Below, piece by piece: positions 741 through 22,135 of a stretch of 22,135 nucleotides of DNA (positions within the stretch are counted from its first letter, which is position 1; every line of letters starts with the position of its first letter). The notes under the pieces are model-generated. The model saw only the letters and a program-made list of their open reading frames with translations, ran no database searches and was not told where the DNA came from. The DNA comes from Octopus sinensis (taxonomy: Eukaryota). Both the position numbers and the translations under genes were made by a program. The stretch spans positions 1 to 22,135 of the forward strand of contig NW_021837004.1 in assembly GCF_006345805.1 (NCBI RefSeq), given 5' to 3'.

Positions 741-959
741 AATACCTATTTCTTTACTACCCCAAGGGGCTAAACATAGAAGGGACAAACAAGGACAGAC
801 AACCGATTAAGTTGATTATATAGACCCCAGTGCGTAACTGGTACTTAATTTATCGACCTCGAAAGGATGAAAGCAAAGTCGACCTCGGCGGAATTTGAAC
901 TCAGAACGTAACGGCAGACGAAATACGGCTGCGCATTTAGCCCGGCGTGCTAACGTTCC
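741..959 (-). mobile_element. tRNA-derived SINE, family B, slightly 5'-truncated
   Basis: Near-identical to the copy at 3121-3351 (cctatttctttactac...gtcgacctcggcggaatttgaactcagaacg...cccggcgtgctaac). B-box-like gagttcaaattcc on the minus strand. Confidence 0.9.
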
Positions 960-1667
960 ACCCTCCTTCCATTTATGAAATGTGGTTTTCTTGATGTTAT
1001 TTTATACAACGCTGAAGTTCTCCCTTGGAATTCCAGATGACCAAACACCAGTGGATTTGCTGGATTGCCTACCCGTTGGTTTTGTTTTTTACCGTGTTAT
1101 CATTATATGGTGCGTTTCATTTTGGTATGCCCCGATTTAATTTTGATTGTTCTCCTTAATATATACATACCTACGCACATACACGCGCACGCACGAAGCC
1201 CGGACAACCGTTACCCCAGGACAAAGTCCTTCCTCTGGGCTATGTGAACGAGAGGAAGACCAAAGAGAAATTCTGAATGGCTTAGAGCACAGCATAAAGG
1301 TTGTTAGTAAAATGTACTTTAAATGAATCTCAACACTTAATAAGGCTTTTGATATGTTTGTTTTCATTTTTCAAAGATACATTATGATGCTCTTTTTATT
1401 ATACTCACTTTTGTAATTGGGGTTATTATATAATTAATGTGATATCTTAAATCTTAGAGAAGTGTTCATGAACTACAAATAATAAGAATAAAAGTTGATT
1501 TCAAAAGTACTTAATTTTTTTTTGTCTTCAGGGAGTTTTGTTCTCGGATTTCTTTCCAGCGATTTTGTCCTACCCGCCACACAAACACGCAAATACAATC
1601 AATGGGGATGAGTTCTCAACACCGCATTGGTGGATAAATATTCTTTATTTGTGGTTTAACAAGGCTA

Positions 1668-3120: not shown

Positions 3121-3351
3121 CCTATTTCTTTACTACCCACAAGGGGCTAAACACAGAGAGGACAAACAAGGACAGACAAACGGATTGAGTCGATTACATC
3201 GACCCCAGTGATTAACTGGTACTTATGTAATCGACCCCGAAAGGATGAGAGGCAAAGTCGACCACGGCGGAATCTGAACTCAGAACAAAACGGCAGACGA
3301 AATACGGCTAAGCAATTCGCCCGGCGTGCTAACCACTCTGCCAGCTCGCCG
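3121..3351 (-). mobile_element. Full-length family-B tRNA-derived SINE with an 18-bp TSD
   Basis: The head reads cggcgagctggcag on the minus strand. Flanked by ttttctgg(g/a)tgaattaaa at 3103-3120 and 3354-3371 (1 mismatch). Confidence 0.93.
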
Positions 3352-3539
3352 TCTTTTCTGGATGAATTAAACCACTAATACAGGGAACAATAAATTAAAG
3401 AATTCGATGTAGAAATATTAAAGAAATGGTAAATTGGAAATCTAAGATCGTATTCCGAAGAATAATGCAAAGAGTGAAATAATGTCAATCAGTTTCAAAT
3501 GTAATTATAAAATGGTAATTTTCGGTAAATTATCTTAAT

Positions 3540-4086: not shown

Positions 4087-4250
4087 AGGCGTATGAGTGG
4101 CTGTGTGGTAAGTAGTTTGCTTACCAGCCATATGGTTCCGGGTTCAGTCCCACTGCATGGCACCTTGAGCAAGTGTCTTCTACTATAGCCACGGGCCGAC
4201 CAATGCCTTGTGAGTTGATTTGGTAGACGGAAACTGAAAGAAGCCTGTCG

Positions 4251-4320
<70 letters not shown>

Positions 4321-4533
4321 GTGTGTGTGTATGTGTATGTGTGTGTCGCTTGTCAACCGATGGTGGCCAGTTTACGTCACCGTAACTTAGCGACTCGGCA
4401 AAAGAGACCGATAGAATAAGTATATTAGGCTTACAAAGAATAAGTCCTAAGGTCAATTTGTTCGACTAAAGGCGGTGCTCCAGCATGGCCACAGTCAAAT
4501 GATTGAAACAAGTAAAACACTAAAGAAAGAGAG
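4087..4533 (+). mobile_element. Full-length family-A tRNA-derived SINE with an internal (TA)n(TG)n tract
   Basis: Collinear with 12628-13080: head (agtggctgtgtggt...ggttcagtcccactg), internal microsatellite, tail (taaaggcggtgctccagcatggcc...gaaacaagtaaaa). Possible low-complexity TSD taaataaataaa. Confidence 0.92.
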
Positions 4534-4951
4534 TAAATAAATAAAATGAAATCAGGAGATACGGAAATGTAGAATTAACTTTTTTAACCGTTTGCCTGTC
4601 CTGCGTATCACATGGGATATACGGGGCATGTTTTCTTGGTATCCATGAATCATATTTGACGCACTTCTCATCATTTTTTTTTTCGACCATTAGAATAACA
4701 TGGGGCTTATGAAAGGAAAGGTTTATATAACAAAGAGCGTATAAACCAAGGGCTAATTAAAAGTCTTAAAATAAGCAAGAGCGTTTAGAACAAACCTATG
4801 AAAATTCATTGGACAGGTAAACAGCAAAAAAGAAACAAAAAGACGCAAACTGGAAAATAAGCAGCTGGATACATTACAAATGGATAAAATACAGTAAGGT
4901 CCTGGATGAAAAACGCTTGATTAGAAGCCCGAAGGATTAGAACTGACCTGG

Positions 4952-7378
4952 GGATCCTTTCGGTTTGAACGGCAGTTTTTTCTAGTGGTGTCATATGAAA
5001 TTGTCACCCATAATTATGACCCTAGCATTTCAATCTGTTTTAGGGTTAGGGTTAGGGTTAGGGTTAGGGGTGGGGAAAGGGTGTCTTTTTTTCTTCACAA
5101 ATGTAAATAAACCCAATCTGTTTCTTAAACGAGGGACATATTCATACGGCACAGAATGTTGTTTACCTCAATGGACGTCAGTGATTGGTTGAAATTGCAG
5201 AAATTAACAACAAATATCTTACAAACTATAGAATTTTCTCAATAAAGCCAAGAGAAAAAGATGTTTTATAAACACATTCTACCAGTATACGAAGTTTAAA
5301 AGTGTTTAGGTACCTAGAAATTATGTTAAAAACTGCCGTTCAAACCGAAAAGACCCAAATATCTTACAAACTATAGAATTTTCTCAATAAAGCCAAGAGA
5401 AAAAGATGTTTTATAAACACATTCTACCAGTATACGAAGTTTAAAAGTGTTTAGGTACCTACAAATTATTTTTAAAAATGCCGTTCAAACCGAAAAGACC
5501 AAAATTCTTACAAACTATAGAACTTTCTCAATAAAGCCAAGAGAAAAAGATGTTTTATAAACACATTCTACCAGTATACGAAGTTTAAAAGTGTTTGGTA
5601 CCTAGAAATTATTTTTAAAAATGCCGTTCAAACCGAAAACCCAAATATCTTCAACAAACTATAGAACTTTCTCAATAAAGCCAAGAGAAAAAGATGTTTT
5701 ATAAACACATTCTACCAGTATACGAAGTTTAAAAAAGTGTTTAGGTACCTAGAAATTATTTTTAAAAATGCCGTTCAAACCGAAAAGACCCAATATCTTA
5801 CTAACTATAGAATTTTCTCAATAAAGCCAAGAGAAAAAATGTTTTATAAACCCATTCTACCAGTATACGAGTTTAAAAGTGTTTAGGTACCTAGAAATTA
5901 TTTTTAAAAATGCCGTTCAAACCGAAAAGACCAAAATATCTCAAACTATAGAACTTTCTGAATAAAGCCAAGAGAAACAGAATGTTTTATAAACACATTC
6001 TACCAGTATACGAAGTTTAAAAGTGTTTAGGTACCTAGAAATTATTTTTAAAAATGCCGTTCAACCGAAAAGACCCAAATATCTTACAAACTATAGAACT
6101 TTCTCAATAAAGCCAAGAGAAAAAGATGTTTTATAAACACATTCTACCAGTATACGAGTTTTAAAAAGTGTTTAGGTACCTAGAAATTATTTTTAAAATG
6201 CCTTTCAAACCGAAAAGACCCAAATATCTTACTAACTATAGAATTTTCTCAATAAAGCCAAGAGAAAAAGATGTTTTATAAACACATTCTACCAGTATAC
6301 GAAGTTTAAAAGTGTTTAGGTACCTAGAAATATTTTTAAAAATGCCGTTCAAACCGAAAAGACCCAAATATCTTACTAACTATAGAATTTTCTCAATAAA
6401 GCCAAGAGAAAAAGATGTTTTATAAAACACATCTACCAGTATAAAAAGTTTAAAAGTGTTTAGGTACCTAGAAATTATTTTTAAAAATGCCGTTCAAACC
6501 GAAAAGACCCAAATATCTTACTAACTATAGAATTTTCTCAATAAAGCCAAGAGAAAAAGATGTTTTATAAACACATTCTACCAGTATACGAAGTTTAAAA
6601 GTGTTTAGGTACCTAGAAATTATTTTTAAAACTGCCGTTCAAACCGAAAAGACCCAAATATCTTACAAACTATAGAACTTTCTCAATAAAGCCAAGAGAA
6701 AAAGATGTTTTATAAACACATTCTACCAGTATACGAAGTTTAAAAGTGTTTAGGTACCTAGAAATTATTTTTAAAAATACCGTTCAAACCGAAAAGACCC
6801 AAATATCTTACTAACTATAGAATTTTCTCAATAAAGCCAAGAGAAAAAGATGTTTTATAAACACATTCTACCAGTATACGAAGTTTAAAAGTGTTTAGGT
6901 ACCTAGAAATTATTTTTAAAACTGCCGTTCAAACCGAAAAGACCCAAATATCTTACAAACTATAGAACTTTCTCAATAAAGCCAAGAGAAAAAGATGTTT
7001 TATAAACACATTCTACCAGTACGAAAAGTTTAAAAGTGTTTAGGTACCTAGAAATTTTTTAAAAATGCCGTTCAAACCGAAAAGACCCAAATATCTTACT
7101 AACTATAGAATTTTCTCAATAAAGCCAAGAGAAAAAGATGTTTTATAAACACATTCTACCAGTATACGAAGTTTAAAAGTGTTTAGGTACCTAGAAATTA
7201 TTTTTAAAACTGCCGTTCAAACCGAAAAGACCCAAATATCTTACAAACTATAGAACTTTCTCAATAAAGCCAAGAGAAAAAGATGTTTTATAAACACATT
7301 CTACCAGTATACGAAGTTTAAAAGTGTTTAGGTACCTAGAAATTATTTTTAAAACTGCCGTTCAAACCGAAAAGATCC
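4952..7378. mobile_element. Non-autonomous TIR DNA transposon (MITE-like, about 405 bp in single-unit form) with a tandemly amplified right end
   Basis: Left TIR 4952-4979 (ggatcctttcggtttgaacggcagtttt) matches the reverse complement of 7351-7378 at 27/28. Direct repeat ctgacctgg at 4943-4951 and 7379-7387 (a 9-bp TSD, or 7 bp tgacctg if the TIRs start with GGG). No transposase ORF. Confidence 0.88.
5040..5069 (+). repeat. Interstitial telomeric-type repeat (TTAGGG)5 inside the TIR element
   Basis: Five perfect TTAGGG copies followed by gtggggaaaggg. Confidence 0.95.
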
Positions 7379-7379
7379 C
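5211..7379. repeat. Tandem array of 15 units of about 145 bp (142-147 bp)
   Basis: One GGTACC per unit, at 5309, 5454, 5597, 5744, 5886, 6030, 6175, 6319, 6463, 6608, 6753, 6898, 7043, 7186 and 7331. Each unit ends in a copy of the right TIR. Confidence 0.97.
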
Positions 7380-7627
7380 TGACCTGGGGTTAAGCATCTC
7401 AGTTAACGACACTAACAAATCAAACAAAACGCTGTACTTCATTATGATGCTTCTTAACTGCTATTTCGCCTACCTCTGGGTTCTGAACTAAAGAGAGAGT
7501 GCAGTGTCTAATTCGGTTGAGTTGTTGATTAGTGATATTAAAAATTAATCGTTTATATCCCGACACTGCTTTGTATCCGTGTAAAAAGCTAGTTTGACAT
7601 TTCGTTCTATTATTATTGAAGGCAGTA

Positions 7628-7806
7628 AGGCAGCGATCCTGCAGATTTGCTCCGTCTTTACATTCTGAGTTCAAATTTCGACTTTGCCGACTTTGCCTTT
7701 CATCCTTTCAGAGTTGATAAATTAAGTACCAATGAAAGACTAGGGTCGGTGAAATCGACTGGTCACCTCCCCACAAATTTCGGCCCTTGTGGCCAATAAA
7801 GAAAGG

Positions 7807-8410: not shown

Positions 8411-8420
8411 ACATTTATTT

Positions 8421-8665
<245 letters not shown>

Positions 8666-9500
8666 ACACAATGTGATTTTCTTTTCAGTCGTGTGTGTGG
8701 CTGTAACTAACGTATGAAACACGGCATTCAACATCCAGCTGCTAATGGTTTTTGTCTCTTACACACGGAAGCGATCCGTCCAGTATGTTCACGTATTTGC
8801 CTTAAATTTCATAGATCAACACATCCCTAAATATATCTGCAACGGACATTCGAAGTTAGCTAAAGTAATCAGTTTAGCTGAATAGGAATTACCAAAAGAG
8901 AAATTATCGACAACTCGACTCCTTTCAAATTGCTTTGCCAGAATTTCGGTCGTTATTTAATCTATTAATAGCAAATCAGAAAGACTAAAATCTCAATTCC
9001 TCATATCTCATTTAAAAATTTCCTCTTCACTACCAGAGTATGATAATTCATTCTGATCGTTCGCTTCTTCTTTTCACTTGTCCTTCGTTCGTAGTAATTC
9101 ATTTATTCATTCGTTAATAGAAAACAAATTTAGCCTGTGCTGCTTTCTTTAACAAAACGTGAATTGTTTACTACATATCTTTTCTGTATGCCATGTTGTT
9201 TGAAGGATACTTCCGGTCAGAGGGTAGAGACATTTTTCACATCCAAAGCGCTCATGTTATCTCTCACTTCAAATAATTCTTCTTTTCTTTTTGTTTTCTT
9301 TCTTTCTTTAACACCCACCGCCCTCGAAATCTCCATCTCTAACTGCAAAATTCATTTGAACAACAAAAAGGATATGTTGACTTCAGTCATCTAACATTTA
9401 CAAATAGAACACGGGTATAGAAATATATAGTCCATAACACACACACACACAGAGCAAAATACGGATACATAGGATGACATACAGAAACTTAAGTTGGGAT

Positions 9501-9504
<4 letters not shown>

Positions 9505-9545
<41 letters not shown>
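9505..9545. repeat. (GA)n microsatellite
   Basis: Direct inspection. Confidence 0.95.
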
Positions 9546-9549
<4 letters not shown>

Positions 9550-9830
9550 AGGACAGAGAGGGAGAGATGTAGGAAAGAGAGTAAAGAAAGAAGGGTATAT
9601 GTGTAGGAGAGTGTTTGTGTGTATGTGTGCGTGCATGTGACCGACCACACTGAAACACACACATATATGATACCAGATATTTTGAAAAATCCTTCCGCAC
9701 GCAGTATGGATGTGCTCAACACCTCCGGTAATTCTTCGGAAGCAAACTGTTGCTAACGACAATTGTCTCAGCAATGTAAACTTCATTAGAAAATCAGCCA
9801 TCTGTGACCACCACTCGACAATGAAGACAA

Positions 9831-10510
9831 CGTAGGCATGGTTGTGTGATTAACAATCTCGCTTCGCAAACATGTGGAAGCACATGGCCCAGTGGTTAGA
9901 GCAGCGGACTCGAAGTCGAGGGATCGCGGGTTCGAATCTCAGACCGGGCGATGTGTGTGTTTATGAGCGAAACACCTAAGCTCCACGCGGCTCCGGCAGA
10001 AAGTAATGGCGAACTTCTGCTGACTCTTTCGCCACAACTTTCTCTCACTCTTTCCTCCTGCATCTTGCAGCTCACCTGCGACGGACTGGCGTCCCGTCCA
10101 GGTGTGGAACCTATACACCAAGGAAACCGGTTGACCGGCCCTTATGAGCCAGGCATGGCTCGAGAAGGAACTTTGCAAACATGCAGTTTTGGGTTCGGTC
10201 CCACTGTGTGACACGGACAATTGCCTTCTACCATAACCTCCGACATACCAATGCGTTCGTTGTAGATGGAAAGTGTATGCAAGTCCATCATGTGTGCGCA
10301 TGTGTGTTTGGGTGTCTGTGTTTGTACTTCCCCACCCCCAACACCACCGCGTGACAGCCGGTGTTTACTTTGTCGCCATCGTAGTAACCTAAAAGCTGGC
10401 GATAGAATAAGTACGAGGCTTAGAAATGTAAGTACTAGAGACAATTTATTCGATTAAACCTGTCTCGACAATGCCCCATCATGGCCGCATCTGAGTAACT
10501 GAAACTAATA
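9831..10510 (+). mobile_element. Diverged family-A SINE interrupted by a younger SINE
   Basis: Head cgtaggcatggttgtgtg at 9831-9874 resumes at 10175 (gcaaacatg...gggttcggtcccactgtgtgacac) and continues to the tail gatagaataagtac...catggccgca...gaaac. Confidence 0.75.
9876..10174 (+). mobile_element. SINE with a family-C tRNA head and an alternative 3' half, inserted into the family-A copy
   Basis: A-box tggcccagtgg (9885-9895) and B-box ggttcgaatct (9929-9939). Matches family C up to about 10054, then diverges. Flanked by gcaaacatg at 9866-9874 and 10175-10183. Confidence 0.88.
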
Positions 10511-12137: not shown

Positions 12138-12627
12138 GCACACATTTAAAAAAAAAATTCACGTTTTCTCCACGATAACTGCAGTGAATCTGTCCTTAGA
12201 AGTTGAAATATGTCAAGTATTTTAACCAACCTAAAGTTCGCAGCTATAAGATCATGATTCAATTGTATTAGGCACTTAAATGGTAAGGCACTGGGTCGGA
12301 TCGAAAATTAAGGGTACACAACAAAAATAGACGAATCCAAACGCGGGTACCGAAGTACAAGAAGAAAGATGAAGGTGCACTTGCTGTTGGCTTTTGAATG
12401 ATCATACATTCACTTGATGAAAGGGTTTTTTTCCTAATAATGTAAAGCTTCCATCAATCAAAAATTCGTTGGAAATATCTAGCAAATTGATACATTATCC
12501 ACCTGTTATATATGTGTGCGTCCGGGGGCCGCTCTTTACTGCTTGACAATCAGTCTTGGTTTATTCGCTTAGCAGTTTTGGCAAAAGTAATCCCTAGAAT
12601 CATCACCTGACTTTAAAAAAAAATAAT

Positions 12628-12819
12628 AGGCGCAGGAGTGGCTGTGTGGTATGTAGCTTGCTTACCAACCACATGGTTTCAGGTTCAGTCCCACTGTGTG
12701 ACACCTTGAGCAAGTGTTTTCTACTATAGCCTCGGATCGACCAAAGCCTTGTGAGTGGATTTGGTAGACGGAAACTGAAAGAAGCCCGTCGTATATATGT
12801 ACATGTATATATATATATA

Positions 12820-12853
<34 letters not shown>

Positions 12854-13080
12854 TTGTGTGTCTGTTTGCCCCCCCCCACCATTGCTTGACAACCGATGCT
12901 GGTATGTTTACGTCCCAGTATCTTAGCGGTTCGGCAAAAGTGACCGGTAGAATAAGTACTAGGCTTACAAAGAATAAGTCCTGGGGCTCGATTTGCTCGA
13001 TTTAAGGCGGTGTTCCAGCATGGCCGCAGTCAAATGAGTGAAACAAGTAAAAGAGTAAAAGAGAGAGAGAGAGTAAAGAG
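12628..13080 (+). mobile_element. Full-length family-A SINE (best-preserved copy)
   Basis: aggcgcaggagtggctgtgtggt head, internal (TA)n(TG)n, tail ending in agtaaaagag repeats. Confidence 0.93.
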
Positions 13081-14908: not shown

Positions 14909-15101
14909 AATGGTTTCAAATTTGGCACAAGACCAGAACTTTAATAGAGCGGGGTGGGGAGTCGATTACATTTATCAAACCCGAAAGGGTGAAAGGCAAA
15001 GTCGACTTCGACGGAATTTGAATTCAGAACGTAAAGACAAAACAATATGCCGCTAAATATTTCACCCGGCGTGCTAACGATTCTACTAGCTCGCTGCCTT
15101 A
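14909..15101 (-). mobile_element. Family-B SINE (diverged)
   Basis: gtcgattacat...gaaaggcaaagtcgac...ggaatttgaattcagaacg...cccggcgtgctaacgattct...agctcgctgcctta. Confidence 0.88.
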
Positions 15102-15110
15102 CTAAATAAT

Positions 15111-15326
15111 GATTTCAAACTTCGTCACAAGGCCAGCAATTTTGGATGAGGGTTAAGTCGATTACATTGAGTCCTAGTACTCAACTGGTGCTTATTTCAA
15201 CTGATTCCGAAAGGAGGAAAAGCATAGTTGTACTCGGCAGAATTTGAACTCAGAACGTGACGACAGGCGAAGCACCGCAGAGCATTTAGCCCAACTTGCT
15301 AACGACTCTGCCAGTTCGCCACCTTA
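15111..15326 (-). mobile_element. Family-B SINE (diverged), tandem to the previous copy
   Basis: Same motifs. ccttactaaataat occurs at both 15097-15110 and 15322-15335; part of this is the shared SINE head and the rest is a possible TSD. Confidence 0.85.
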
Positions 15327-15329
15327 CTA

Positions 15330-15361
<32 letters not shown>

Positions 15362-15440
15362 CAACAACAACAACAACGACGACGACGACGACAACAACAA
15401 CAACAACAATAATAATGATGATAATAATAATAATAATAAT
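15330..15440. repeat. In-phase compound trinucleotide microsatellite (AAT)/(AAC)/(GAC)/(GAT)
   Basis: Direct inspection; explains the poly-Leu ORF 15299-15556. Confidence 0.95.
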
Positions 15441-15912
15441 AAAAGATGGGCTACAGCAAATATTCTGCTCAATACCACAGATTTGCTTGTCAGTTGTTTG
15501 ACTTTAACCAGTTGAGCATGTCCCTTAGTGGCTGGCGATATGTGCACTCTGATCACGAGCAGAAGTAGTGGGGAGCATCATAGCCATGTGTTGAGAGGGA
15601 TTCTTTGGGGTTTGAATAATTCACCTCTGGAAACATGGGTGTTCTTTCAACATCCTTAAACAACCTTATTCAGGGACCCTTTGAGCGGGATGGGCTACTC
15701 AACCTGAAGAAAATTCTAACTGGGCCCACCTGCAAGGTCATGTGCTGTTTATCTTGATATGAGATCACCATGTCGCGCACATATGGTTGTGATGAGCATG
15801 TGCCTGGTGTACCCTTATCAGACGGGTAGTCATGATGGGTATATTGGGCTTCGTATATTTTACCCCAGTGTCACTTTGATGGCATGAACTGCTCTCTCAC
15901 TCAATGATGATG

Positions 15913-15966
<54 letters not shown>

Positions 15967-15981
15967 TAATAATAATAATAA
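15441..15981 (+). mobile_element. Probable 3' end of a non-LTR retroelement with an (AAT)n tail
   Basis: Complex segment ending ...ctgctctctcactcaat followed by a long (AAT)n tail at 15913-15981. I recall this as a recurrent octopus repeat, but there is no second copy in the window. Confidence 0.45.
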
Positions 15982-16131
15982 TCATCCTTTCTACTGGAAG
16001 CACAAGGCTTCAAATTTGGGAGAAAACATTAAGTCGATTATATCGACTCCAGTGCGTAACTGGTACGTATTTTATTCGACCCCAAAAAGATGAAAGGCAA
16101 AGTCGACCCCGGCGGAATTTGAAGTCAGAAT
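15982..16131 (-). mobile_element. 5'-truncated family-B SINE
   Basis: aagtcgattatatcgactccagtgcgtaactggtac...gatgaaaggcaaagtcgaccccggcggaatttgaagtcagaa. Confidence 0.88.
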
Positions 16132-16861
16132 GAAACAATAACAGTAATAATAATAATAATGATGATGATGCAAATTGTAAAGGCTTTGATAAATACATGT
16201 TTTATGTTGATATTCCCAAATGCTAAATATCACAACATATTTAACATGCCTGTAAATATAGAAGAAATATCATAGCTTCAGTTTTTATCCGTCTGTAACC
16301 GCCGTTTCCGTCATATGCCATGCACATGCACCTGTGCAGTACATCGGACGCACTCGAGAGAGAGGAACGAATTAATTATCTCGCCTGGAATCCGCACGCT
16401 CGAGCAGGCCTTTCTCTTCACGATTGCCACTTGAAAATAAGCAGCCATACACAGTGGATCCGTCCAGCAGCGAGATCAAGTGGAAAGTAACAAACTATCT
16501 CTCTTGTTCTTGGGGCTAAACGGCTATGAATTTACCACCTACGTGTGCGTGAAAATTACTTTCTTTGTGTTTGCACAGAGGAGGAAATGACCACGAAACT
16601 GGAGCCTTTGCCATCGGTTGTGAAGCATCCACTTTAACCCCGTGTGTGTGTCGCAGCGGTTGTACTTATATCTATGTGTGCACAGTTAAAAAAATATAAA
16701 AATAAAAATAAATAAATAAATGAAAGAGGAGAGCGAAATAGAGAGGCAGAAAGTTAAATGTATAGGGTGCAAAAGGTAGCAGACGTTAATTGTCTTCAAC
16801 TGGTCCCACACTGTGATGGAATAAATCAAATTTATTAAAAGGATAATCAACGTTTACAATT

Positions 16862-16898: not shown

Positions 16899-16952
<54 letters not shown>

Positions 16953-17203
16953 TATATATATGTGGTGTATGTATGTATGCATGTATGTATGTATGTAGGT
17001 AGGTAGGTATGTATGCATGCTATATGTATGTATGTATGTATGTTTTTATGTATGTATGTATGTTTGTATGTATGCATGTATGTATGCATGTATGTATGTA
17101 TGTATGTATGTATATATATGTATGTGTATATGTATGTATGTTTGTATGTATGTATGTATTTATGTATGTATGTATGTATGCATGCATGTGTATGCATGTA
17201 TGG

Positions 17204-17250
<47 letters not shown>
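16862..17250. repeat. Large compound microsatellite (CA)n/(TA)n/(TATG)n
   Basis: Direct inspection. Confidence 0.95.
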
Positions 17251-17602: not shown

Positions 17603-17860
17603 TTTTACGTTTTATTTGTTTGTCATTAGTCTACGGTCATGCTGGGGCACCACCTTGAGGAATTTTAGTCGAATCAGTTGACCCTCCCCCCAGTACTTAT
17701 TTACTTTTTAAGCCTAGCACTTACCTATCGTTCTTTTTTGACGAACCGCTAATTTACGGGGATGTAGACACACCAATGCTGGTTGTCAAGCGTGATTGGG
17801 GGACAAAGAGAGACATACATGAACACACACATACACATGTGTGTATATATGTATGTATAT

Positions 17861-17901
<41 letters not shown>

Positions 17902-18098
17902 TGTGTGTGTTTGTATGTGTGTGTAGTATGTATACGACAGGCGTCTTTCAGTTTCCGTGTACCAAATCCATTCACAAGGCTTTATTCAGACCGAGGTTAC
18001 TGTAGAAGACATTTGCCCAAATTGCCACGCACAGGGACTGAAACCAGAACCATGTGGTTTGGAAGTAAACTTCTTAACAGACAGCCACGCCAGCGCCT
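17603..18098 (-). mobile_element. Full-length diverged family-A SINE with an internal microsatellite
   Basis: Reverse complement of the family-A tail (ggtcatgctggggcaccacctt...), (TG)n core, and head (tttcagtttccgtgtaccaaatcc...gaaccatgtggtttggaagt...acagccacgccagcgcct). Confidence 0.88.
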
Positions 18099-18384
18099 AA
18101 AATGTTGATGTTTGCTTTTTGTTTTTTATTTCTTTTGCCCCACCGTTGATTAAATCATAAGCTTTAGCGCATATTTTATTTTATTTTATTTTTTTGTTGT
18201 TGCTTTCTGTTATAATATTAATTAGTAATTTGCTATGTATGCGGATATCCACCTCATAAGCAGTTTCTGTTTAATCTGCTTTATAAATGTATTTGGCGAG
18301 TTCTTAATAGGGTTGAGAAATTCGTTTAATTCATTCTGGAAGCTATTAGAAATAAAGTTTAGTTTTTTTTTTTTCACTGACATA

Positions 18385-18705
18385 CTTATATGGTAAGAAG
18401 CTCGTTTCCCACCCACATGGTCCCGGGTTCAGTCCCACTGCCTTGGGCACGTATCTTTTACTATAGCCGAACAAAGCTTTGGTACACGGAAACTAAAAGA
18501 AGCTCGTCGTATATGTATATCTATCTACCCATGTATGTGTGTCTTTCTGACTGAGTTTGTACCCCACTACCGCTGACAGCTGGTGTTGGTTAGCTTACAT
18601 CTCTGTAACTTGGCAGTTCGGCCAAAGAGATCGACAGAATAAGTACAAGGCGGTGACACAGCATGACCGCAGTTCAATGACTGAAACAAGCAAAAGTGTC
18701 AAAGA
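18385..18705 (+). mobile_element. Family-A SINE with internal deletions
   Basis: tggtaagaagct...cacatggtcccgggttcagtcccactg...cggaaactaaaagaagctcgtcgtat...agaataagtacaaggcggtg...gactgaaacaagc. Confidence 0.82.
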
Positions 18706-20754: not shown

Positions 20755-21075
20755 ATCGATCTCAGGACATTTTTCAAAGCCTAGTACTTATTCCATCGGT
20801 TATGTTGCCGAACCGCCAAGATAAGTGCACACAAATACACTAATACTTATTAAGCAATGGGGTGGGGGTGGCTATAAAAACACATAAATATACAAATACA
20901 TACACACACACACACACACACGACAGGCGTTTGTCAGTTTTCGTCAATCAAATCTACTAGTAAGGTTTTGGTCGGCCCGAGGCTATAGCAGAAGGAACTA
21001 GGTGCCAAGGTGCCACACAATGGGACTGAAGCCGGAACCATGTGGTTGGGTAGCACGGTTCTTACCAGACAGTCA
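20755..21075 (-). mobile_element. Family-A SINE, 3'-truncated and diverged
   Basis: aagcctagtacttattccatcgg...gccgaaccgccaag...(CA)n...ttggtcggcccgaggctatagcagaag...gggactgaagccggaaccatgtggttgg...cttaccagacagtca. Confidence 0.85.
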
Positions 21076-21170
21076 TGGCACTTTGGGCAAGTGTCCTCTA
21101 TTATAGCCATGGGTCGACCAAAACCTAGGAGTAGTTTTGGTAGACGGAAGCTGAAAGAAGCCCGTCGTAT
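21076..21170 (+). mobile_element. Partial family-A SINE directly abutting the previous copy in opposite orientation
   Basis: tggcactttgggcaagtgtcctctattatagcc...tggtagacggaagctgaaagaagcccgtcgtat. Confidence 0.85.
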
Positions 21171-21534
21171 ATACGTATGTGGTGTATGAATGTATGTATA
21201 TACATATGCATATATATATATATATATTATATATATATATATATAACATATATACAACCCCACCCACATACATATATATATATATATTATATATATATAT
21301 ATATATATCAAAATAAAGAATAGGATATCAGTCGTGTGCAGTACGACCGTTTCAAGCGACTCCATTTAATTGAATAATGCAACCATTACATCAATTTAAA
21401 TGCAGTGCCATCATCAGCTGCATACAGCAGGTAATATGAAATAATGTTAGAGAGGTACAATATTTATCATTTAATTTCTTCAAATTTTCCGGGGAATTGA
21501 TATAAAGAAAGGAATACAACTTTTCAACAGATAT

Positions 21535-21843: not shown

Positions 21844-22135
21844 TTAAACTTTATTCAGTTTTGGTTTGTACTTTTCTATGAATATAGTTTCTTTGTGTAT
21901 TCATGCTTGGTCTGTGGAAAAACTTGGAACTTGGGAAACTTATTTTTGTTGCACAAATGTCTCTGTCCACTAAGTGGTAATTGCCTTGTACTGGGCTCTC
22001 GTATTTGTTGTCTATGAATAGTAAGTCTATTTCTAAGAGTGCGTTTTGTTTGACCTATGTAGTCCGCGGTACATCCTTTACATTTAAGAGCATATATTAT
22101 TTTTTTGACGAACAGGTAAATATTTTTATATGGTG
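21844..22135 (-). pseudogene. GIY-YIG endonuclease domain (C-terminus of a Penelope-like retroelement ORF), frameshifted, running off the window edge
   Basis: Manual translation with two frameshifts: HHIKIFTCSSK/IIYALKCKGCTADYIGQTKRTLRNRLTIHRQQIREPSTRQLPLSGQRHLCNKNKFPKFQVFP.../KETIFIEKYKPKLNKV* (stop at 21844-21846). Shows the IIY..C..C...YIGQT...R...H and E..FI.K..P.LN signatures. Confidence 0.88.

What the first reader, a model, noticed from the sequence alone, without database searches (positions are those of the whole stretch)
4943..7387. Satellite DNA forming inside a transposon: MITE right end amplified 15 times with TIRs and TSD intact
A ~405-bp TIR element has grown to 2427 bp by tandem amplification of its terminal 145 bp, which includes the right TIR. 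The outer TIRs (27/28 match) and the flanking duplication ctgacctgg are preserved, so the whole unit could in principle still be mobilised in trans. It presents 15 tandem putative transposase-binding ends. GG termini with a 9-bp TSD fit Merlin/IS1016- or Mutator-type superfamilies (inference; a 7-bp TSD reading with GGG ends is also possible). TE-derived satellites are known in general, but amplification of the terminus including the TIR is an unusually clear snapshot.
Basis: partly seen in the sequence, partly recalled or inferred. Interest (0 to 1): 0.75.

Follow-up and report, generated by a model that had tools for sequence, protein, structure and literature searches.

The report
Transposon with its right end repeated
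A small non-coding cut-and-paste transposon in what is probably an octopus-like genome carries 15 tandem copies of its last 145 bases, a neat but not unprecedented example of a repeat array growing inside a mobile element.

Summary
Window 4952-7378 is a 2427-bp element with 28-nt terminal inverted repeats (27/28; 28/29 if one more G/C is counted). It is flanked by a direct repeat and contains 15 head-to-tail units of about 145 bp (5211-7378). Each unit holds a copy of the right inverted repeat. It has no coding capacity.

I add four points:
- The flanking repeat is 11 bp (CTGACCTGGGG) and overlaps the element's terminal Gs, so the target duplication can be read as 7, 8 or 9 bp.
- The unit's 3' boundary coincides with the transposon terminus to within about 1 nt.
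- The unit junctions are built alike: 10 of 14 read GACC|CAAAT exactly, 4 are altered by small changes, and none has the outer GATCC. This indicates one founding junction that was later amplified.
- Units 10, 12 and 14 are identical, which shows recent expansion in 290-bp dimers.

Best reading: a Mutator/Rehavkus-like or Merlin-like non-autonomous element. Its founding duplication was probably made by a transposase-linked event (right end joined to a site inside the element) and then grew by unequal exchange.

No other copy could be retrieved, because no eukaryotic DNA collection was available. Family status, copy number and mobility therefore remain untested. Transposons with subterminal tandem arrays are well documented (Rehavkus, Tetris, Galileo, cod hAT MITEs, Merlin). 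This is a new member of a known kind, of modest interest.

The parts
4943..4951 (+). Left copy of the target-site duplication, read as 9 bp (CTGACCTGG). The identical stretch continues to 4953 because it overlaps the element's terminal GG.
   Evidence: The 11-mer CTGACCTGGGG occurs only at 4943 and 7379, with 0.08 expected by chance. Alternative readings are the 7-bp TGACCTG with GGG/CCC ends, or 8 bp.
4952..4979 (+). Left terminal inverted repeat, GGATCCTTTCGGTTTGAACGGCAGTTTT.
   Evidence: 27/28 complementary to 7351-7378, or 28/29 when 4951/7379 are included. This is the only minus-strand copy of the TIR core in the window.
4980..5210 (+). Unique left arm of the element, 231 bp and non-coding. 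It contains (TTAGGG)5 and G-runs at 5040-5082.
   Evidence: No similarity to the unit beyond the TIR: one shared 8-mer against about 2 expected. No ORF longer than 68 aa and no Pfam hit. TTAGGG x5 reported by TRF.
5211..7378 (+). Tandem array of 15 units of about 145 bp (unit starts 5211, 5356, 5500, 5644, 5790, 5931, 6076, 6221, 6365, 6510, 6655, 6800, 6945, 7088, 7233). Each unit ends with a copy of the right TIR, and the 14 internal junctions have the consensus ...CCGAAAAGACC|CAAATATC.
   Evidence: TRF period 145, 15.0 copies, 95% matches. Alignment and junction table. TIR core copies at 5333, 5478, 5621, 5768, 5910, 6198, 6342, 6487, 6632, 6777, 6922, 7065, 7210 and 7355.
6510..7378 (+). 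Youngest block of the array: three 290-bp dimers (units 10-15) alternating two unit variants (position 13 T/A, 24 T/C, 126 C/A).
   Evidence: Units 10, 12 and 14 are identical (0 differences). The dimers differ from one another at 4-9 of 291 columns. In units 8-15 the mean difference is lower at lag 2 and lag 4 than at lag 1 and lag 3.
7351..7378 (+). Right terminal inverted repeat, the true outer end (...CTGCCGTTCAAACCGAAAAGATCC). It forms the last 28 nt of unit 15.
   Evidence: It differs from the internal copies by keeping the T of GATCC.
7379..7387 (+). Right copy of the target-site duplication (CTGACCTGG). The identity continues to 7389.

Best explanation
This is one insertion of a non-autonomous cut-and-paste DNA transposon. 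The host is a eukaryote, probably a cephalopod. The canonical form of the element would be about 405 bp: a 259-bp left part plus a 145-bp right part, bounded by 28-nt TIRs that begin with GG(G), and it makes a 7-9 bp target duplication. That combination fits the Mutator/Rehavkus or Merlin superfamilies.

The element carries a subterminal array made of its own right-hand 145 bp. I infer that the array began with a single founding duplication. Its junction joins the right terminus of the element to an internal site 259 bp from the left end. The simplest way to make such a junction is a transposase-linked event:
- a hybrid-end (sister-chromatid) transposition in which the right end of one sister copy is inserted into the other copy; or
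- a self-nested insertion followed by loss of the duplicated left part; or
- repair synthesis that runs off a cleaved right end.

Any of these leaves the outer TIRs and the original target duplication intact. The founding junction then lost one base (GATCC to GACC). The dimer grew to 15 units by unequal exchange or out-of-register repair, most recently in 290-bp double units next to the right end. The internal TIR copies are likely to bind the partner transposase but to be poor cleavage sites.

What is shown: the anatomy, the position and sameness of the junctions, and the dimer periodicity. What is inferred: the superfamily, the founding mechanism, and transposase binding.
For: - TIR plus flanking direct repeat, far beyond chance.
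- No ORF longer than 73 aa and no Pfam domain inside the element.
- The unit's 3' end coincides with the element terminus. The consensus internal junction is ...AAAAGACC|CAAATATC, against the terminal ...AAAAGATCC|CTGACC. For a duplication with random breakpoints in a 404-bp element, landing within about 1 nt of the end has a probability of roughly 3/404, under 1% (my estimate).
- The 14 junctions share one design: 10 read GACC|CAAAT exactly and 4 differ by small changes, none has the outer GATCC, and none contains a copy of the genomic target. This indicates one founding event followed by amplification.
- Units 10, 12 and 14 are identical and alternate with a second variant, the signature of recent unequal exchange in dimers.
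- Literature. Alternative transposition using ends from two copies or sisters makes tandem direct duplications that start precisely at the transposon end (Ac/Ds and P hybrid element insertion; PMC3744419). Tandem TE dimers do expand by unequal exchange, for example hobo with 13-19 copies (PMC5932611). Rehavkus has a 9-bp TSD, 26-400 bp TIRs and a minisatellite before the 3' TIR (PMC6446971), with up to 50 monomers in Tribolium. Merlin has GG termini, an 8-9 bp TSD and internal tandem repeats.
- Mutator and Merlin families are both annotated in Octopus vulgaris. The only database hit for the window's repeats is an Octopus bimaculoides protein.
Against: - Only one copy is available, so nothing shows that the element belongs to a dispersed family, that a partner transposase exists, or that the single-unit form exists.
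- The junction is not a perfect terminus. One T is missing, and I must explain that as a later mutation.
- The boundary coincidence is a post hoc observation on a single locus. A one-base microhomology (C) at the breakpoints is also compatible with slippage.
- The target-duplication length is ambiguous (7-9 bp), so the superfamily call is weak.
- Rehavkus is so far reported only from arthropods and annelids.
- Copy number could be mis-assembled. Units 3-7 have many 1-nt indels that may be consensus errors.
Confidence: 0.55

Rival explanations
1. The same transposon insertion, but the founding duplication arose by ordinary replication slippage or unequal crossing-over with no transposase involved. 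The coincidence of the unit boundary with the terminus is then chance.
For: Slippage and unequal exchange are the default origin of tandem duplications and are enough to explain the later growth. The two breakpoints share a 1-nt microhomology, C before CAAATATC and at the end of the unit. The junction lacks one base of the terminus, so it is not a clean strand-transfer product.
Against: A random 3' breakpoint falls within about 1 nt of the terminus less than 1% of the time (estimate). One nucleotide of microhomology is no better than chance.
Confidence: 0.28
2. The array is an inherited, family-wide feature rather than an in-situ 'snapshot'. On this view the master copy already carried the minisatellite, as Rehavkus, Tetris and Galileo do. 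The whole 2.4-kb element transposed here, and the repeats serve as extra transposase-binding sites that aid mobilisation.
For: Families with a variable number of subterminal repeats are documented, and extra binding sites are proposed to raise transposition efficiency. Here the target duplication is perfect and the outer TIRs differ at 1 of 28 positions, while some units differ from each other at up to 17 substitutions plus indels. Part of the array may therefore be older than the insertion.
Against: Units 10, 12 and 14 are identical, so at least the last expansions are very recent and could be local. Only the right end is repeated, and the left arm has no unit-related motif. None of the internal ends keeps the outer terminal sequence. 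This rival concerns timing and function and is compatible with the founding mechanism in my best explanation.
Confidence: 0.4
3. The array was built by repeated independent insertions of the element, or of a truncated form, into the same site (the double-insertion model).
For: Double insertion is a documented source of tandem DNA-transposon dimers (PMC5932611).
Against: That model predicts a copy of the target site in each junction and whole elements as units. Here the junctions share one design, contain no copy of CTGACCTGG, and the units lack the 259-bp left part.
Confidence: 0.02
4. Assembly artefact: a single unit or a few units were inflated by mis-assembly of long reads.
For: Units 3-7 show many single-base indels, some in homopolymers, which is typical of long-read consensus errors. 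Tandem arrays are prone to copy-number errors.
Against: Units differ by ordered substitutions (two alternating variants, plus private changes in units 1, 3, 4, 6, 9 and 13), which cannot come from one template. The array is only 2.2 kb, shorter than a typical long read.
Confidence: 0.05
5. Not a TIR transposon. It could be a Helitron/Helentron-type carrier of satellite-like repeats, as in bivalve molluscs, or a free satellite array that happens to be flanked by an inverted partial monomer.
For: In molluscs, short satellite-like arrays are typically carried by Helentron-derived non-autonomous elements (PMC7492417, listed).
Against: A 28-nt TIR that abuts a perfect 9-11 bp direct repeat at both ends is the signature of DDE cut-and-paste insertion. 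By general knowledge of those families, Helitrons and Helentrons make no such target duplication and lack such TIRs.
Confidence: 0.03

Closest known systems
Rehavkus elements (Mutator-related DNA transposons) and their satellite-bearing derivatives in Tribolium
   Same: 9-bp target duplication (one reading here), TIRs from 26 bp upwards, and a minisatellite placed just before the 3' TIR. The number of subterminal repeats is variable, up to 50 monomers, and can expand into true satellites (PMC6446971; bioRxiv 10.1101/2024.12.02.626372).
   Different: No transposase (PHD-finger DDE) could be linked to this element. Rehavkus is known only from arthropods and annelids, whereas this host is probably a mollusc. 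In Tribolium the repeats sit in both long inverted termini, but here only the right end is repeated, and the unit contains the whole TIR up to the terminus.
Merlin superfamily elements with internal tandem repeats
   Same: Conserved 5'-GG termini, 8-9 bp target duplication and TIRs of 24 bp or more. Several families carry internal tandem repeats, including a 163-bp unit in 3-4 copies (PMC8101967). Merlin families are annotated in Octopus vulgaris.
   Different: No DDE_Tnp_IS1595 partner was found. The described Merlin repeats are not reported to include the TIR or to reach 15 copies.
Tetris (Drosophila virilis) TIR-220 repeats and Galileo TIR repeats
   Same: These are non-autonomous elements whose subterminal tandem repeats share sequence with the terminal domain: 37 bp at about 80% in Tetris, with extra transposase-binding sites in Galileo. 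The repeats vary in number by unequal crossing-over and seed satellite arrays (PMC4079207).
   Different: Tetris and Galileo are foldback-like, with repeats in both long TIRs. Here the array is one-sided, the unit contains the complete 28-nt TIR at 93-96% identity, and the unit boundary is the terminus itself.
Tandem direct duplications made by alternative transposition (maize Ac/Ds reversed-ends or sister-chromatid transposition; P-element hybrid element insertion)
   Same: A duplication in which one breakpoint is exactly a transposon end, produced in one step by transposase acting on ends from two copies (PMC3744419).
   Different: Those cases duplicate flanking host DNA and involve hAT or P elements. 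Here the target would lie inside the element itself, and the event is inferred, not observed.
[quoted passage not shown]
   Same: MITEs that exist with one or many internal monomers and can lose their ends to become satellites. The cod MITE has TIRs made of 167-169 bp tandem units (PMC12628747; PMC12368964).
   Different: Different superfamilies (Tc1/mariner, hAT) and different proposed mechanisms (stem-loop excision, capture of a pre-existing repeat, microhomology). In none of them is the unit boundary reported to be at the terminus.

Membership tests
Non-autonomous TIR (cut-and-paste) DNA transposon / MITE | Terminal inverted repeats at both ends | tested here: met
   28-29 nt with 1 mismatch, 4951-4979 / 7351-7379.
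Non-autonomous TIR (cut-and-paste) DNA transposon / MITE | Target-site duplication immediately outside the TIRs | tested here: met
   A perfect direct repeat abuts both ends. The 11-mer occurs only twice in the window. Its length can be read as 7, 8 or 9 bp.
Non-autonomous TIR (cut-and-paste) DNA transposon / MITE | No transposase gene | tested here: met
   The longest stop-free stretch is 73 aa, with no Pfam hit.
Non-autonomous TIR (cut-and-paste) DNA transposon / MITE | Many dispersed copies with different target duplications, and small size (under about 800 bp) | not testable with these tools
   No second copy in the window. The collections hold no eukaryotic genomes, so there were only chance 20-mer hits. 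The protein route was empty. The inferred single-unit form is 404-405 bp, but this copy is 2427 bp.
Merlin superfamily | 5'-GG termini | tested here: met
   GGATCC... at the left end, and GGATCT... for the reverse complement of the right end. Criterion taken from PMC8101967.
Merlin superfamily | 8- or 9-bp target duplication | tested here: inconclusive
   The 9-bp and 8-bp readings are both possible, and so is a 7-bp reading, because the repeat overlaps the terminal Gs.
Merlin superfamily | Autonomous partner encoding a DDE_Tnp_IS1595 transposase with the same TIRs | not testable with these tools
   No transposase in the window and no host genome available.
Mutator / Rehavkus | 9-bp (8-11 bp) target duplication | tested here: inconclusive
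   The 9-bp reading CTGACCTGG is possible but not the only one.
Mutator / Rehavkus | TIR of 26-400 bp with a minisatellite before the 3' TIR | tested here: met
   A 28-nt TIR and a 15-unit array abutting and including one TIR only. Criterion taken from PMC6446971. This is an architectural resemblance only.
Mutator / Rehavkus | Partner transposase (MULE DDE with PHD finger) | not testable with these tools
   None in the window and no host genome available.
Satellite DNA | Head-to-tail tandem monomers | tested here: met
   15 units at 95% matches.
Satellite DNA | Long arrays and high genomic abundance | not testable with these tools
   Only one 2.2-kb array is seen. There is no other unit in the 22-kb window.
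Foldback elements (Tetris, Galileo, FB) | Long inverted termini, both built from tandem repeats | tested here: not met
   The left end has a single 28-nt TIR and a unique 231-bp arm with no unit-related sequence.
Tandem TE arrays made by double insertion | A copy of the target site inside each tandem junction | tested here: not met
   The junctions have the consensus GACC|CAAATATC and contain no CTGACCTGG. Criterion taken from PMC5932611.
Helitron/Helentron carriers of satellite-like repeats (molluscs) | No TIRs and no target duplication | tested here: not met
   Both a TIR and a target duplication are present. The criterion comes from general knowledge of the family.

The most novel reading that the evidence does not exclude
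The unit junction is a fossil of an aberrant transposition: the element's right end was inserted into a sister or second copy of the same element. If so, transposase itself seeds satellite-type arrays made of transposon ends in an animal genome. The resulting row of crippled ends (T lost from GATCC) would then act as a decoy or enhancer that changes how the family is mobilised. This would give a one-step, testable route from MITE to satellite, distinct from the slippage, capture, stem-loop and double-insertion models.
Probability: 0.3. Interest if true: 0.55.

Novelty: new member of a known kind. Interest (0 to 1): 0.3.

Why it matters
How dispersed transposons turn into tandem satellites is still explained by several competing models. 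This copy still has intact outer ends and its target duplication, together with an array whose unit starts exactly at the transposon terminus. That lets the founding step be separated from the later growth. If the same junction design recurs in other copies or families, it would point to transposase-made founding dimers. Taken alone, this is one more example of a DNA transposon with a subterminal minisatellite, in a poorly studied host group, apparently cephalopods. It is useful for repeat annotation there but not surprising to specialists.

Tried and rejected
- I scanned the metagenome, prokaryotic-genome and viral collections with a 20-nt TIR pattern. This gave 5, 9 and 0 loci. All hits were bare 20-22-mers in bacterial contigs with no further similarity, so they are chance matches.
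- I tried a protein route into eukaryotic assemblies, using a chimeric query of all stop-free peptides from the unit (both strands) and the left arm. It produced 1947 word candidates and none scored E<=1.
- Exact look-ups of two window ORFs, and of the one octopus hit, were not on record.
- I looked for a paralogous empty site by joining the two flanks and searching the window. The 200 bp around the insertion point are unique; only distal SINE-like parts repeat.
- I looked for a second copy of the element in the window and found none.
- I looked for subterminal motifs shared by the left arm and the unit that could be extra binding sites. There was one 8-mer against about 2 expected.
- I searched full-text papers, and the supplement of the Octopus vulgaris repeat paper, for the TIR or unit sequence. 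There were no occurrences.
- Rfam and tRNA scans of the window found nothing.
- The 433-bp period offered by TRF is no better than 145 bp. The real higher-order pattern is a 290-bp dimer in units 10-15.
- I considered an 11-bp target duplication and rejected it, because it would make the two ends unequal (ATCC... against GGATC...).
Full report
Tandem Repeats Finder reports one array at 5211-7375 with period 145, 15.0 copies, 95% matches and score 3910. I cut the array at a conserved anchor and aligned it, which gave 15 units of 141-146 bp from 5211 to 7378. The inverted-repeat search returns arms at 4951-4979 and 7351-7379, 29 nt and 97% complementary. A 21-nt core of this repeat occurs 15 times in the window against none in 100 shuffles: once on the minus strand at the left end and 14 times on the plus strand, one per unit. 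Unit 6 is missed only because of a 1-nt deletion. Every unit has one GGTACC. No reading frame inside the element exceeds 73 codons, and the longest ones have no Pfam match. The element is therefore non-coding.

**The flanking duplication is real but ambiguous in length.** CTGACCTGGGG (11 nt) occurs exactly twice in the window, at 4943-4953 and 7379-7389. It overlaps the terminal Gs of the element, so three readings are possible:
- 9 bp (CTGACCTGG) with GG...CC ends;
- 8 bp with ends unequal by one base;
- 7 bp (TGACCTG) with GGG...CCC ends.

An 11-bp reading would make the two ends unequal and I reject it. The length cannot be fixed from one copy.

The junction table shows that the 14 internal unit junctions share one design, with the consensus ...CCGAAAAGACC|CAAATATC. 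Ten read exactly so and four (into units 3-6) are altered by small changes. The true right end reads ...CCGAAAAGATCC|CTGACC, and the first unit is preceded by ...AATTAACAA|CAAATATC. Three things follow.
- The 3' boundary of the repeated unit is the transposon terminus itself, to within about one base. For a duplication with random breakpoints in a 404-bp element I estimate the chance of this at under 1%.
- The junctions share one design, none has the outer GATCC, and none contains a copy of the genomic target. The array therefore descends from one founding junction and not from repeated insertions. This excludes the double-insertion model, which predicts a target copy in each junction (PMC5932611).
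- None of the 14 internal TIR copies keeps the outer terminal sequence. Ten lack the T of the terminal GATCC and the other four are altered further there. Ten of the 14 also carry a further change in the TIR (ATGCC or ATACC instead of CTGCC, or an indel). They are not equivalent to the outer end.

**Growth of the array.** Units 10, 12 and 14 are identical. They alternate with a second variant that differs at positions 13, 24 and 126. The three 290-bp dimers of 6510-7378 differ from each other at only 4-9 of 291 columns. In units 8-15 the mean difference is lower at lag 2 and lag 4 than at lag 1 and lag 3. This is the usual footprint of recent unequal exchange, or out-of-register repair, in double units next to the right end. 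Units 3-7 are the most divergent, with up to 17 substitutions plus indels between units 6 and 9. Many of their differences are single-base indels, which may be true decay or long-read consensus errors; I cannot tell which. The 433-bp period that TRF also lists is no better than 145 bp.

**Mechanism.** Shown: the anatomy, a founding junction at the terminus, and amplification in dimers. Inferred: how the founding junction arose. A junction between a transposon end and a site inside the same element is what a hybrid-end transposition would give in one step. In that event the right end of one sister copy and the left end of the other are used together, with the target inside the element. The product is a-L-t-R|t-R-b, with the outer TIRs and the original target duplication untouched. 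The by-products are a small circle and an empty-site chromatid. Such alternative transpositions are established for Ac/Ds and P elements, and they produce tandem direct duplications that begin precisely at the transposon end (PMC3744419). Two other routes give the same product: a self-nested insertion followed by recombination between the two left parts, and repair synthesis running off a cleaved right end and re-priming internally. All three depend on transposase cleavage at the right end. The missing T must then be a mutation of the single founding junction that all later junctions inherited. An intact internal end would compete with the outer end, so a crippled one may also be what allowed the composite to persist; that is speculation. 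I put about 0.5-0.55 on a transposase-linked founding step and about 0.3 on plain slippage with a coincidental boundary. One base of microhomology is present.

**Timing.** I cannot say whether the array grew here or arrived with the element. The perfect target duplication and the near-perfect outer TIRs, set against up to about 10% divergence between some units, are compatible with either. The last dimer expansions are very recent.

**Host and surroundings.** The window has no detectable gene, tRNA or Rfam match. It has about 36% G+C and is packed with microsatellites, 44 TRF rows. It contains two SINE-like repeat families in several copies and a GIY-YIG endonuclease fragment at its right edge that passes the Pfam cut-off. 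A chimeric query made from these repeats hit a single database protein, UniRef A0A0L8I0J4 of Octopus bimaculoides, through an exonised copy of one SINE-like family: 70% identity over 50 residues, with five further copies in the window. The host is therefore probably an octopus-like cephalopod. This rests on one repeat match only. Mutator families (55), Merlin families (18) and MITE families (74) are annotated in Octopus vulgaris, so both candidate superfamilies are plausible there.

**Comparison with what is known.** Transposons that carry subterminal tandem arrays, and arrays that share sequence with the terminus, are well documented.
- Rehavkus elements have a 9-bp duplication, TIRs of 26-400 bp and a minisatellite before the 3' TIR (PMC6446971). 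In Tribolium they carry 2-50 monomers and have given rise to an 80-kb satellite.
- Tetris TIR-220 repeats share 37 bp with the terminal domain and vary by unequal crossing-over. Galileo repeats add transposase-binding sites (PMC4079207).
- Atlantic cod has hAT MITEs whose TIRs are built from 167-169-bp units (PMC12368964).
- Merlin elements have GG termini, 8-9-bp duplications and internal repeats, including a 163-bp unit (PMC8101967).
- Reviews list the Xstir and miDNA4 models (PMC12628747).

This copy resembles Rehavkus most in architecture and Merlin most in its termini. Membership of either cannot be tested without a partner transposase. It is not a foldback element, because the left end is single. 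It is not a double-insertion tandem, and it is not Helitron-like, because TIR and target duplication are both present.

**What could not be done.** No eukaryotic nucleotide collection was available. Scans of the metagenome, prokaryotic-genome and viral collections with the TIR gave only chance 20-mers. Peptides from the element found nothing. Exact-protein look-ups failed. There is no second copy and no paralogous empty site in the window. The sequence does not occur in the searchable literature. Copy number in the genome, the single-unit form, the partner element, the true duplication length and the assembly's copy count are therefore all open.

**Verdict.** This is a new member of a known kind. 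Its most interesting feature is a unit junction sitting exactly at the transposon end, which makes a transposase-made founding dimer a testable idea. Interest is modest (0.3).

Noticed in passing
window 5040-5082: Five perfect TTAGGG repeats followed by G-runs (GGGGTGGGGAAAGGG) lie inside the unique left arm of the element. This is an interstitial telomere-like, potentially G-quadruplex-forming tract carried by a transposon.
   Followed up: no
window 4124-4465(-), 10145-10453(-), 12606-13001(-), 17659-18105(+), 18349-18492(-), 20937-21365(-): Several copies of one SINE-like repeat, recognisable by recurring peptide motifs in ORF translations such as ...AIVEDTCSRCHAVGLNPEPYGW. Each lies next to TG/TA microsatellites. 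ARAGORN and Rfam do not call a tRNA-like head.
   Followed up: partly
window 839-963, 3188-3375, 7609-7797, 14966-15038, 15208-15324, 16077-16135: A second SINE-like family. A piece of it is exonised in the Octopus bimaculoides predicted protein UniRef A0A0L8I0J4 (70% identity over 50 aa). This is the only clue to the host.
   Followed up: partly
window 21879-22133 (-), running off the right end: An open frame with a GIY-YIG endonuclease domain (PF01541, 26.1 bits against a cut-off of 22.6). It is probably the 3' part of a Penelope-like retroelement.
   Followed up: partly
whole window, e.g. 8416-8602 (TA)96, 16902-17250 (ATAT)87, 15330-15442 (AAT/AAC)n, 15913-15982 (ATA)n: Very high microsatellite density, 44 TRF rows in 22 kb. 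No protein-coding gene, tRNA or Rfam family was detected.
   Followed up: no
window 5500-6220 (units 3-7): These units carry many single-base indels, partly in homopolymer runs, unlike units 8-15. They may reflect older units or long-read consensus errors.
   Followed up: no
window 5304-5313 and once per unit: Each unit contains the perfect 10-bp palindrome TAGGTACCTA (KpnI site) inside a longer imperfect palindrome. Its significance is unknown.
   Followed up: no
window 9500-10500: A local G+C rise to 0.49 against about 0.36 elsewhere. It overlaps a SINE-like copy and an (AG)n tract, and no coding signal was found.
   Followed up: no
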